A DNA stretch of 63,892 nt, the filler included, from Octopus bimaculoides (Eukaryota): assembly GCF_001194135.2 (NCBI RefSeq). It is 5 parts of 5 records of this genome, joined end to end, with 100 filler letters (N's around TTAATTAATTAA, not from the genome) between each part and the next. Parts side by side here need not be neighbours in the genome. Positions count along the whole stretch, not along the records: positions 1 to 23,575 come from NC_068981.1; 4 more parts are not named here. The stretch is one strand, 5' to 3'. The notes beneath the pieces are model-generated. The model saw only the letters and a list, made by a program, of their open reading frames with translations, made no database searches and had not been told where the DNA came from. The first letter of the stretch is position 1, and every line of letters begins with the position of its first letter. This document shows positions 13,732 to 14,146 of this stretch, piece after piece. The translations under genes were made by a program, and so were the position numbers.

Positions 13732-14146
13732 ACATATAATTGCTAACCAAGCGTGGCGTCCTATACGGGACAGTGCTACTGACGTTTATAGCTCCAGGAA
13801 GACATCTCTTCCAGCTGGCTAACGACACACATTCTCTGTACAATTCGTATTTGCGAGGAGACGTCATCATCGCATCCCTATACTTACGTGATACACACGG
13901 ACTCGAGTTTCTGGGTGGCTACCCGTCCTCAGCGTGTGTTTATCCTCAACTACTGATGAAAACTCACTCCACTCGCAAAATACTATATGCCCTTTCCAGC
14001 GACAAACTGTCGCTGATCTCGACAAAGGAGAAATAAGCTATATTAAATCTCTGAGCAAGATATAAGCAGAAGCAATACGGAATTGTAACATATAATTGCC
14101 AACCAACCGTGGCGTCCTATACGGGACAGTGCTACTGACGTTTATA
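13732..14146 (-). mobile_element. Retrozyme-like / solo Penelope pLTR-like element: 356-bp unit plus 59-bp terminal duplication
   Basis: Direct repeats 13732-13790 and 14088-14146 (57/59 identical); non-coding; contains an HHR. Confidence 0.75.
13893..13939 (-). ncRNA. Minimal type I hammerhead ribozyme, intact core
   Basis: ACACACG-CTGAGGA-C-GGGT-AGCC-ACCC-A-GAAAC-TCGA-GTC-CGTGTGT: 7-bp perfect helix I, 4-bp helix II, palindromic ACTCGAGT helix III, predicted cut between 13900 and 13899. Confidence 0.85.

What the first reader, a model, noticed from the sequence alone, without database searches (positions are those of the whole stretch)
13732..14146. Retrozyme-like unit: intact hammerhead inside a 356-bp monomer with a 59-bp terminal duplication
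Seen: direct repeats 57/59 identical at a 356-bp period. Between them on the minus strand is ACACACG-CUGAGGA-C-GGGU-AGCC-ACCC-A-GAAAC-UCGA-GUC/CGUGUGU, with all core nucleotides, a perfect 7-bp helix I and a self-complementary ACUCGAGU. The only defect is a C.A at the base of helix II, which one CpG decay would explain. Each repeat starts TATAAACGTCAGT in ribozyme orientation, which is promoter-like. Known: metazoan retrozymes are short non-coding repeats with type I HHRs that yield circular RNAs. Inference: a 1.17-unit insert is what reverse transcription around a circular template would give; a solo PLE pLTR with partial tandem duplication is the alternative. Only one HHR is present here, so this copy alone cannot excise a monomer.
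Basis: partly seen in the sequence, partly recalled or inferred. Interest (0 to 1): 0.9.

Follow-up and report, generated by a model that had tools for sequence, protein, structure and literature searches.

The report
Octopus hammerhead-ribozyme retroelement, partial tandem copy
The flagged 415 bases are a real but probably inactive copy of a short, non-coding mobile element carrying a self-cleaving hammerhead ribozyme, a kind already known in mussels, corals and salamanders and here seen as a multi-copy family in an octopus genome.

Summary
There are 57/59 direct repeats at a 356-bp period, with a type I hammerhead (HHR) on the minus strand at 13939..13893.

The motif alone is weak evidence: Rfam gives 20.7 bits against a gathering score of 34. 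The decisive result came from a covariance model built only from four experimentally validated retrozyme HHRs. Its top three hits in 69 kb of octopus DNA were this site, a second site in the window (1748..1707) and one in Octopus bimaculoides (L005 4142..4102).

The three loci are homologous outside the ribozyme, collinear from the cleavage site (z = 6.6-15.9, 0/1000 shuffles). All six helix I pairs differ by compensatory changes.

The 59-bp repeat is the family's 3' terminal segment. The locus is therefore the last 59 nt of an upstream copy followed by one full 356-nt copy. No reverse transcriptase or endonuclease ORF is nearby.

It fits the animal non-LTR retrozyme class (non-autonomous elements derived from Penelope-like elements).

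- **Not supported:** CpG decay as the cause of the C.A mismatch, and the promoter reading of TATAAACGTCAGT.
- **Undecided:** a circular versus a multimeric RNA template.
- **Untested:** self-cleavage and circular RNA.

Verdict: new member of a known kind, moderate interest.

The parts
13732..14087 (-). One full 356-nt unit of the HHR-bearing element, read on the minus strand: about 188 nt 5' region, HHR, about 100 nt conserved block, 59-nt 3' terminal segment R2
   Evidence: Period 356. Collinear homology to window 1547-1868 and L005 3900-4275. No Pfam domain in its only ORF. GC 44.8%.
14088..14146 (-). R1: the last 59 nt of a truncated upstream copy, giving a head-to-tail partial tandem
   Evidence: 57/59 identical to 13732-13790. 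nhmmer family profile positions 284-343, E=3e-9. The same segment is the 3' end of the homology in both relatives.
13732..13790 (-). R2: the 3' terminal 59-nt segment of the full copy
13893..13939 (-). Type I hammerhead ribozyme motif. Helix I 13939..13933 / 13899..13893; core CUGAGGA 13932..13926; helix II 13925..13912 with C.A at its base; GAAA 13911..13908; helix III ACUCGAGU 13908..13901; C17 = 13900; predicted cleavage between 13900 and 13899.
   Evidence: Sequence. RF00163 20.7 bits. Own model R1 19.9 bits, E=0.0024. Descriptor and shuffles. Same architecture as four validated retrozyme HHRs. Helix I covariation 6/6.
13890..13944 (-). HHR with a possible distal extension of helix I: GAU 13944..13942 pairs with AUC 13892..13890, after an AA bulge at 13941..13940
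   Evidence: MFE fold. Inference only.
13739..13845 (-). Block downstream of the ribozyme that is conserved with the two relatives at the same offset from the cleavage site
   Evidence: Local alignments excluding the HHR: z=12.9 against window 1547-1706 and z=6.6 against L005 3900-4101, 0/1000 dinucleotide shuffles each.
1547..1868 (-). Second family member in the window ('winA'). Its HHR is at 1748..1707 with core UUGACAA (U3/A8 variant), helix II GGGG-CAACA-CCCU and helix III ACUAGU. It ends at assembly gap 1143-1546 and has (TA)n on both outer sides.
   Evidence: Model R1 25.5 bits, E=5e-5. Sequence. Homology. TA repeats 1869-1900 and 1090-1142.
13298..13633 (+). Flanking octopus SINE copy (context, not part of the element). 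Its 3' tail points towards the unit, and 98 nt of unique sequence (13634-13731) lie between them.
14147..14450 (-). Flanking octopus SINE copy in the same orientation as the ribozyme. Its A/T-rich tail, ending ...AAAAGATATA, abuts the unit directly.

Best explanation
The 415 bp are one insertion of a short (about 330-365 nt), non-coding, hammerhead-bearing retroelement family of Octopus. This is an animal 'non-LTR retrozyme', meaning a non-autonomous derivative of Penelope-like elements (PLEs).

The insertion has the form [last 59 nt of an upstream copy][one full 356-nt copy].

Inferred life cycle of the family:
1. Master loci are transcribed as multimers.
2. Two HHRs pair through the palindromic helix III (ACUCGAGU) to form the active double hammerhead, which cuts after GUC.
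3. The unit-length RNA, with 5'-OH and 2',3'-cyclic phosphate ends, is circularised by a tRNA ligase.
4. A PLE reverse transcriptase/GIY-YIG endonuclease supplied in trans copies multimeric or circular RNA into (TA)n-like targets. Copying starts in the conserved 3' segment and often runs past one unit, which yields partial tandems.

This particular copy has a single HHR with a C.A mismatch at the base of helix II, and its repeats are 3.4% diverged. It is most likely an inert relic. At most it could weakly cut a read-through transcript.

Shown here: the motif, the family homology, the covariation, the partial-tandem anatomy and the absence of an ORF. Inferred: cleavage, circular RNA and PLE mobilisation.
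For: 1. Core and helices are present as described. The architecture is the same as four experimentally validated retrozyme HHRs from coral, mussel and axolotl, all with a palindromic helix III; one has CUGAGGA and one has a mismatch at the base of helix II.
2. A covariance model built only from those four ranks this site third in 69 kb x 2 strands. The two better hits turn out to be homologous elements.
3. Homology outside the ribozyme is collinear from the cleavage site: z=12.9, 6.6 and 15.9, with 0/1000 shuffles.
4. Helix I: 6/6 pairs have changes on both sides and 100% of cells are paired, while slid controls collapse.
5. The unit is 356 nt at 44.8% GC, inside the published range of 150-450 bp and <50% GC; mussel units are 350-390 bp.
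6. No PLE RT/EN remnant was found in the window, L004 or L005. There is no Pfam domain in the unit's ORF and no tRNA.
7. The 5' ends of the three copies lie 154-188 nt upstream of the cleavage site, which argues for a discrete short element.
8. (TA)n lies at or near the ends: winA is flanked by (TA)16 and (ATAT)n, and the unit by ATAT/TATAT. (TA)n is a reported PLE target.
9. PLEs are abundant and recently active in Octopus.
10. The octopus origin of the window is shown.
Against: - Only three family members could be examined, and overall identity is low (52-59%). Upstream halves are barely or not significantly alike.
- No tandem with two HHRs was seen, and this is the feature that defines a retrozyme.
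- The HHR is below Rfam's gathering score and has a C.A at 10.1-11.1.
- The monomer prefers a non-hammerhead fold.
- The circular 356-nt fold is no more stable than shuffles (z=-1.1).
- No expression, cleavage or circularity data exist.
- The link to PLEs rests on literature and insertion anatomy, not on sequence similarity to an octopus PLE.
- The covariation alignment was fitted to the model and has only 3 rows.
Confidence: 0.78

Rival explanations
1. It is the terminal part (pLTR or 3' UTR) of an autonomous Penelope-like element. The three loci would be 5'-truncated PLE insertions, and this one is a truncated copy preceded by a 59-nt piece of another.
For: PLE insertions are typically heavily 5'-truncated and organised in partial tandems with HHRs in the pLTRs. 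The three copies share the 3' two-thirds best and diverge upstream. Octopus carries many PLEs.
Against: - No RT/EN similarity in 69 kb around the three loci.
- 5' ends cluster within about 35 nt instead of being scattered.
- The HHR is the 'canonical' type with helix III that Cervera & de la Pena assign to retrozymes. It is not the minimal PLE type, which has helix II of 7-8 bp and no helix III.
- The R1-to-unit junction closes a 356-nt period with no room for an ORF.
Confidence: 0.12
2. The true locus is a longer tandem array (a retrozyme multimer or satellite) that the short-read draft assembly collapsed to 1.17 units.
For: The scaffold is a gapped draft with six N runs. Both relatives abut gaps of about one unit: winA 322 bp + 404 N = 726 bp, and L005A about 370 bp + 366 N. 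Tandem repeats of this size commonly break short-read assemblies.
Against: The 415 bp are contiguous with unique flanks on both sides. The two 59-bp copies differ at two positions, so they are separate genomic segments and not an overlap artefact.
Confidence: 0.08
3. A chance hammerhead-like motif sits inside an unrelated local 59-bp duplication.
For: - The motif is sub-threshold in Rfam.
- The descriptor's chance rate, extrapolated to a whole genome, is tens of sites.
- Helix I is made of AC/GT microsatellite-like sequence in a microsatellite-rich genome.
- An exact-pattern scan of metagenomes returned three pure chance matches in a bacterial gene.
Against: Two independent loci carry a homologous HHR at the same place in a homologous element, with fully compensatory helix I changes.
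Confidence: 0.02

Closest known systems
Mussel non-LTR retrozyme Mg353 (Mytilus galloprovincialis; Cervera & de la Pena 2020, PMC7229834)
   Same: Both are from molluscs. The unit sizes match (353 vs 356 nt), both have low GC and both are non-coding. Both HHRs are type I with helix I of 6-7 bp, helix II of 4 bp and a helix III of 2 bp with a palindromic tetraloop (ACGCGCGU vs ACUCGAGU), and cleavage falls after GUC.
   Different: There is no sequence similarity outside the core. The mussel element is documented in tandem arrays, as circular RNA and as self-cleaving; here there is one HHR, a C.A at 10.1-11.1, and no RNA data.
Axolotl retrozyme HHRs Amex1/Amex2 (Ax330/Ax353)
   Same: Amex1 shares the CUGAGGA core. 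Amex2 has a non-Watson-Crick pair (U.U) at the base of helix II and a 2-bp helix III with a palindromic tetraloop. It cleaves poorly as a monomer and well as a dimer. This is the behaviour expected here.
   Different: The axolotl elements are vertebrate and higher in GC (51-58%), with about 10^5 copies in long arrays. Here the mismatch is C.A.
Penelope-like element pLTRs and their partial-tandem insertions
   Same: Shared features are a head-to-tail partial tandem, association with (TA)n, an HHR in the repeated part, and a likely dependence on PLE RT/EN.
   Different: No ORF is present. The unit is 356 nt. The HHR is canonical rather than the minimal PLE variant. No inverted truncated copy and no identifiable 30-40-bp tail were seen.
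Schistosoma Sm-alpha SINE-like HHR repeats and Rfam Hammerhead_HH9 (RF02275)
   Same: They are short interspersed, non-coding repeats with a type I HHR whose helix I carries an internal loop and a distal stem. The O. bimaculoides relative aligns to HH9 over its full length at 20.7 bits.
   Different: All scores are below gathering. No tRNA-like pol III head was detected.
Plant LTR retrozymes
   Same: They are non-autonomous and have HHR-delimited RNA that circularises.
   Different: Plant elements have type III HHRs inside about 350-bp LTRs, a PBS, a PPT and 4-bp TSDs. Here the 59-bp repeat contains no ribozyme and the HHR is type I.

Membership tests
Hammerhead ribozyme, type I (Rfam RF00163 / clan CL00010) | Conserved core C3U4G5A6N7G8A9 ... 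G12A13A14 ... A15.1-U16.1, H17 | tested here: met
   CUGAGGA / GAAA / A...U / C17 at 13932..13900 on the minus strand.
Hammerhead ribozyme, type I (Rfam RF00163 / clan CL00010) | Three helices around the core, with helix I open-ended | tested here: met
   Helix I has 7 bp, helix II 4 bp plus a tetraloop, helix III 2 bp plus a palindromic tetraloop.
Hammerhead ribozyme, type I (Rfam RF00163 / clan CL00010) | Watson-Crick 10.1-11.1 pair at the base of helix II (usually G-C) | tested here: not met
   C.A at 13925/13912. The relatives have G.U and U.U. Precedent: axolotl Amex2 has U.U and is active as a dimer.
Hammerhead ribozyme, type I (Rfam RF00163 / clan CL00010) | Score at or above Rfam's gathering threshold | tested here: not met
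   20.7 bits against 34. No hit at gathering.
Hammerhead ribozyme, type I (Rfam RF00163 / clan CL00010) | Helices supported by compensatory changes among homologues | tested here: met
   Helix I: 6/6 pairs changed on both sides, 100% paired; 1/500 shuffles reach 6 pairs and none reaches the covariation score; slid controls give 0-1 pairs. Caveat: there are 3 sequences and the alignment was fitted to the model. Helices II and III are invariant or uninformative.
Hammerhead ribozyme, type I (Rfam RF00163 / clan CL00010) | Site-specific self-cleavage | not testable with these tools
   This needs in vitro transcription of monomer and dimer. The thermodynamic fold favours an inactive conformer for the monomer.
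Animal non-LTR retrozyme (Cervera & de la Pena 2020) | Canonical type I HHR (helix I about 6 bp, helix II about 4 bp, short helix III with a palindromic loop) | tested here: met
Animal non-LTR retrozyme (Cervera & de la Pena 2020) | Non-coding unit of about 150-450 bp, GC <50%, no LTR/PBS/PPT | tested here: met
   The unit is 356 bp at 44.8% GC. Its ORF has no Pfam hit, and the repeat is only 59 bp and lacks the HHR.
Animal non-LTR retrozyme (Cervera & de la Pena 2020) | Head-to-tail tandem with at least two HHRs, so that a monomer can be excised | tested here: not met
   This locus has 1.17 units and one HHR. For the family as a whole the test is inconclusive: the two relatives abut assembly gaps about one unit long. 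Monomeric derivatives are common in described families.
Animal non-LTR retrozyme (Cervera & de la Pena 2020) | Multiple dispersed genomic copies | tested here: met
   Three loci in about 63 kb of octopus DNA examined. The genome-wide number is not measurable here.
Animal non-LTR retrozyme (Cervera & de la Pena 2020) | Expression as unit-length linear and circular RNA | not testable with these tools
   No transcriptome access.
Animal non-LTR retrozyme (Cervera & de la Pena 2020) | Co-occurrence with autonomous PLEs in the same genome | not tested
   Literature only: PLEs are abundant and recently active in O. vulgaris and O. bimaculoides. My PLE protein search listed no cephalopod among its best 120 hits.
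Penelope-like element pLTR | Contiguity with an RT + GIY-YIG ORF | tested here: not met
   tblastn with Poseidon_Ac against the window, L004 and L005 gave only noise (E>4).
Penelope-like element pLTR | Minimal HHR variant (long helix II, short helix I, no helix III) | tested here: not met
   The architecture is canonical.
Penelope-like element pLTR | Partial tandem insertion, with a microsatellite ((TA)n) target | tested here: met
   The form is [59-nt 3' piece][full unit]. TA runs lie at the ends of the unit and of winA. The (TA)n part is only suggestive in a TA-rich genome.
Plant LTR retrozyme | Type III HHR in each of two roughly 350-bp LTRs, plus PBS, PPT and a 4-bp TSD | tested here: not met
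   There is a single type I HHR in the unique part. The repeats are 59 bp without a ribozyme, and no clear TSD is present.
tRNA-derived SINE | tRNA-like head with pol III A and B boxes | tested here: not met
   ARAGORN finds no tRNA-like structure in the window.

The most novel reading that the evidence does not exclude
Octopus genomes may carry a very abundant, possibly still active retrozyme family. Two unselected copies in about 63 kb suggest a rough order of 10^4-10^5 copies. Such a family would produce circular RNAs of about 350 nt. In this reading:
- a non-Watson-Crick 10.1-11.1 pair is a tolerated family trait;
- natural U3-A8 core variants exist;
- the gap-adjacent copies are unresolved tandem dimers inserted into (TA)n by PLE machinery.

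This would be a new abundant class of small circular RNA in cephalopod tissues, including neural tissue.
Probability: 0.3. Interest if true: 0.55.

Novelty: new member of a known kind. Interest (0 to 1): 0.4.

Why it matters
It extends HHR-bearing non-LTR retrozymes to cephalopods. In the open literature I could search, neither octopus repeat annotations nor ribozyme surveys mention them.

It also gives a concrete family to look for in octopus RNA-seq: two subfamilies, a conserved 3' module, and a predicted cleavage/ligation junction at GUC|CGUGUGU or GUC|UGCAGA.

If expressed, these elements would be a ribozyme-made source of small circular RNAs. The host genome is known for SINE expansion and heavy RNA editing.

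The three copies offer natural variants at two positions of mechanistic interest: the 10.1-11.1 pair and the C3-G8 pair. This particular locus is probably inert.

Tried and rejected
- **Rfam at gathering score on the whole piece:** nothing. On 700 nt at E<=10, no hammerhead was listed. It appeared only when 71 nt were given.
- **Loose core pattern CTGANGA..GAAA..TH:** not above chance.
- **Copies via a spurious 98-aa ORF across the unit:** not on record and no homologues.
- **Exact-pattern scans:** Viral contigs gave 0. Metagenome contigs gave 3 hits, all in one conserved bacterial gene without helices, so chance.
- **PLE protein search (Poseidon_Ac query from the supplement of PMC11167929):** 4617 hits, but no cephalopod among the 120 listed, so no octopus PLE locus could be fetched.
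- **BLAST of the unit against 45 kb of O. bimaculoides DNA:** nothing. The relatives are too diverged for BLAST and were found only with the covariance model.
- **Circular-RNA fold of the 356-nt monomer:** not more stable than shuffles (z=-1.1), so it is no evidence either way.
- **Flanks as further degenerate copies:** rejected.
- **A second, decayed HHR in L005 337 nt downstream (17 bits):** the surrounding sequence is not homologous to the family, so it is treated as spurious.
- **tRNA-like head or bacterial-type promoter and terminator scans:** nothing relevant.
- **MAFFT alignment of the seven HHRs:** it misaligned helix III, so the model-based alignment was used instead.
- **Sequence similarity of the unit to coral, mussel or axolotl retrozymes outside the core:** none.
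Full report
**1. Observation**

The window piece is a gapped draft scaffold with six N runs. It has 37% GC when N is excluded and is rich in microsatellites.

At 13732-13790 and 14088-14146 there is a 59-nt direct repeat, 57/59 identical, with a 356-nt period. 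It is the only repeat of complex sequence in the neighbourhood.

The minus strand between the repeats reads ACACACG CUGAGGA C GGGU AGCC ACCC A GAAAC UCGA GUC | CGUGUGU.
- Helix I is 13939..13933 paired with 13899..13893 (7 Watson-Crick pairs).
- C17 is 13900.
- The only departure from the hammerhead (HHR) consensus is C10.1.A11.1 (13925/13912).

The description is accurate at the stated coordinates.

**2. Is the motif more than chance?**

On its own the evidence is modest.
- Rfam reports nothing at gathering score. Hammerhead_1 scores 20.7 bits against a gathering score of 34, and only when the search is cut to 71 nt.
- A loose core pattern is not enriched.
- My structural descriptor finds this single site in the window. 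It found 4 sites in 3000 dinucleotide shuffles of about 41 kb each (both strands), only one with helix I of 7 or more pairs. That is about 10^-3 per window, or tens of chance sites in a 2.7-Gb genome.
- An exact-pattern scan of metagenomes returned three pure chance matches inside a bacterial gene, which shows that such matches do occur.
- The monomeric hammerhead fold (-10.6 kcal/mol) is less stable than an alternative fold (-17.4). This is usual for type I HHRs with a 2-bp helix III.

**3. Origin of the window**

A pogo/Tigger CENP-B_N ORF fragment at 10972-11367 has Octopus bimaculoides proteins as its only homologues. Interspersed repeats of the window match two O. bimaculoides loci (L004, L005; GCA_001194135.2) at up to 95-96% identity. 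The window therefore comes from an octopus.

The unit lies between two copies of the abundant octopus SINE arranged tail to tail. One is 13298-13633 on the plus strand, followed by 98 nt of unique sequence. The other is 14147-14450 on the minus strand, and its tail abuts the unit.

**4. Comparison with validated retrozyme ribozymes**

The supplement of Cervera & de la Pena 2020 (PMC7229834) gives the sequences of four cloned, self-cleaving retrozymes: coral Amil224, mussel Mg353, and axolotl Ax353 and Ax330.

My descriptor recovers all four. They have helix I of 6 bp, helix II of 3-4 bp and helix III of 1-3 bp. Helix III is always a perfect palindrome: ACAGUACUGU, ACGCGCGU, ACACGUGU, ACAUGU.

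The octopus site falls inside this range, with 7, 4 and 2 bp and the palindrome ACUCGAGU.
- It shares CUGAGGA with Ax330.
- It shares a mismatch at the base of helix II with Ax353 (U.U). That ribozyme cleaves 22% in 1 h as a monomer and efficiently as a dimer.
- Cervera & de la Pena 2014 define exactly this architecture as the canonical metazoan type I HHR. They contrast it with the minimal HHRs of PLE pLTRs.

**5. The decisive result**

I built a covariance model (R1) from those four HHRs only. I then searched the window plus the two O. bimaculoides loci with filters off. The three best hits were:

| Locus | Strand | Bits | E-value |
|---|---|---|---|
| window 1748..1707 | minus | 25.5 | 5e-5 |
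| L005 4142..4102 | minus | 21.0 | 1e-3 |
| the finding, 13938..13894 | minus | 19.9 | 2e-3 |

The first ('winA') reads UCUGCA UUGACAA GGGGCAACACCCU GAAAC UA GUC | UGCAGA. The second ('L005A') reads UCCAGA CUGAUGA UGAGCAAUGACU GAAAC UA GUC | UUUGGA. L005A aligns full-length to Rfam Hammerhead_HH9, with an internal loop and a distal stem in helix I, at 20.7 bits.

The three loci are homologous outside the ribozyme.
- With the HHR excluded, the 160-200 nt downstream of the cleavage site align collinearly at the same offsets.
- The z-scores are 12.9 (unit vs winA), 6.6 (unit vs L005A) and 15.9 (winA vs L005A). None of 1000 dinucleotide shuffles reached the observed score in any pair (alignments).
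- Overall identity is 52-59%.
- The upstream halves are only marginally alike (unit vs L005A, 16/1000) or not alike.

On the model-based alignment of the three HHRs, all six helix I pairs show changes on both sides and every cell is paired. Sliding the partner strand destroys the pairing. There are only three sequences and the alignment was fitted to the model. Even so, the pattern is what selection on the helix predicts.

The HHR of the finding is therefore a descendant of a functional ribozyme, not a chance motif.

**6. Anatomy**

The homology with both relatives ends at the end of the 59-nt segment. winA stops there at an assembly gap, 166 nt after its cleavage site, against 168 nt in the unit. 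The 59-nt repeat is therefore the 3' terminal segment of the element.

The locus, read in ribozyme orientation, is [last 59 nt of an upstream copy, 14146..14088][full 356-nt copy, 14087..13732].

Further anatomical points:
- The flanks are not further copies.
- The 5' limits of the three copies lie 154-188 nt upstream of the cleavage site, which suggests a discrete element of about 330-365 nt.
- No reverse transcriptase or GIY-YIG remnant is detectable in the window, L004 or L005 with a Poseidon PLE protein.
- The unit's only ORF has no Pfam domain, and there is no tRNA-like head.
- TA runs border the copies. winA lies between (AT)16 at 1869-1900 and (ATAT)n at 1090-1142, beyond the gap. The unit lies between ...CATAT and TATCTT..., next to a SINE tail of the kind that often ends in (TA)n.
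- (TA)n is a reported preferred target of Naiad PLEs, which occur in Octopus. A zinc-finger-like linker was hypothesised to mediate the insertion bias toward microsatellite repeats in Neptune PLEs.
- The two 59-nt copies differ by 2/59. With the octopus calibration of Jukes-Cantor (JC) distance 0.09 per 25 My, this is on the order of 5 My, with a very wide error.

**7. Mechanism**

By analogy with the characterised animal retrozymes, master copies of the family would be transcribed as multimers. Two HHRs would pair through the palindromic helix III to make the active double hammerhead. Cleavage after GUC would give unit-length RNA, which a tRNA ligase circularises. A PLE RT/EN acting in trans would insert cDNA.

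A product of more than one unit arises if reverse transcription starts in the 3' segment and runs past one unit on a multimeric or circular template. PLE biochemistry shows internal initiation on unprocessed RNA, with partial tandems as the normal outcome. The 1.17-unit form therefore does not by itself indicate a circular template.

This locus has one HHR, so no monomer can be released. It is best regarded as an inert relic.

**8.

- **CpG decay.** The unit retains 23 CpGs (o/e 1.12, against 0.89 for the window). The relatives carry G.U and U.U at 10.1-11.1. A weak pair here looks like a family feature rather than a recent lesion.
- **Promoter.** The TATAAACGTCAGT of the unit corresponds to TAATTCACGGCAG and TAAATAGCAGTAG in the relatives. 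TATAAA occurs 1.5 times per kb.
- **Structured circle.** The 356-nt circular fold is -98.7 kcal/mol, z=-1.1 against shuffles.

**9. Novelty**

Type I HHR repeats, or non-LTR retrozymes, are established in cnidarians, molluscs (mussel), arthropods, amphibians and fishes. They are now argued to be PLE derivatives, with monomeric copies common.

In the searchable literature, no paper links hammerheads or retrozymes to cephalopods beyond a remark on PLEs. A detailed O. vulgaris repeat annotation does not mention them.

This is a new member of a known kind. This copy is ordinary and probably dead. The family may be abundant: two unselected copies were seen in about 63 kb, which is a very rough basis.

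**10. Limits**

No eukaryotic nucleotide database was available. Only 45 kb of additional octopus DNA could be fetched. Copy number, the existence of tandem arrays, linkage to a specific PLE, expression, cleavage and circularity are all untested.

Noticed in passing
window 1707-1748 (minus); element about 1547-1868: A second hammerhead element lies in the same window, and its catalytic core reads UUGACAA. That is U3 and A8 instead of C3 and G8, a compensatory pair change described as a natural variant in Schistosoma PLE hammerheads. Helices I, II and III are otherwise good. It could be two independent transitions in a dead copy or a functional variant.
   Followed up: partly
window 1143-1546 (N gap) and L005 4297-4662 (N gap): Both relatives of the unit abut assembly gaps of about one unit (404 and 366 N). 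winA plus its gap is 726 bp, about 2.04 units, lying between two (TA)n runs. This is what an unresolved tandem dimer inserted into a TA microsatellite would look like. Gap sizes are only estimates.
   Followed up: no
L005 3900-4275 (O. bimaculoides CM046606.1, about 31.529 Mb): The O. bimaculoides family member lies within the span of a gene model whose product hits Pfam CCDC137, on the same strand, presumably in an intron. Its HHR has a canonical CUGAUGA core but a decayed helix II.
   Followed up: partly
window 13298-13650 (+) and 14147-14450 (-): Two copies of the abundant octopus SINE flank the unit in inverted, tail-to-tail orientation. Their arms are 81-86% complementary over 48-56 nt (I1 and I4). 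If co-transcribed, they could form a long imperfect hairpin of the kind that serves as an RNA-editing substrate.
   Followed up: no
window 10972-11367 (minus): A 131-aa ORF carries a CENP-B N-terminal DNA-binding domain (Pfam E=6e-10). It is a pogo/Tigger-type transposase fragment. Its only database homologues are two O. bimaculoides gene models, one annotated as kinetochore protein Spc24, which looks like a transposon-chimeric annotation.
   Followed up: partly
window 4919-5229 and 23175-23538; L005 14037-14406, 18636-19008, 21080-21468: Another interspersed repeat of about 310-370 bp is present twice in the window. It matches three copies within 8 kb of L005 at 84-96% identity, so it is a young, abundant family. 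It was not classified.
   Followed up: no
window 5239-5304: A 16-bp tandem repeat (TTCACCGTGAAGAAAG, 4 copies) sits directly after the repeat at 4919-5229.
   Followed up: no
window 13926-13939 with 13901-13907 (minus): The minimum-free-energy fold extends helix I into the core: GCUGAG pairs with CUC.GAG of helix III. This gives an inactive conformer 7 kcal/mol more stable than the hammerhead fold, consistent with a ribozyme that is active only as a dimer.
   Followed up: partly
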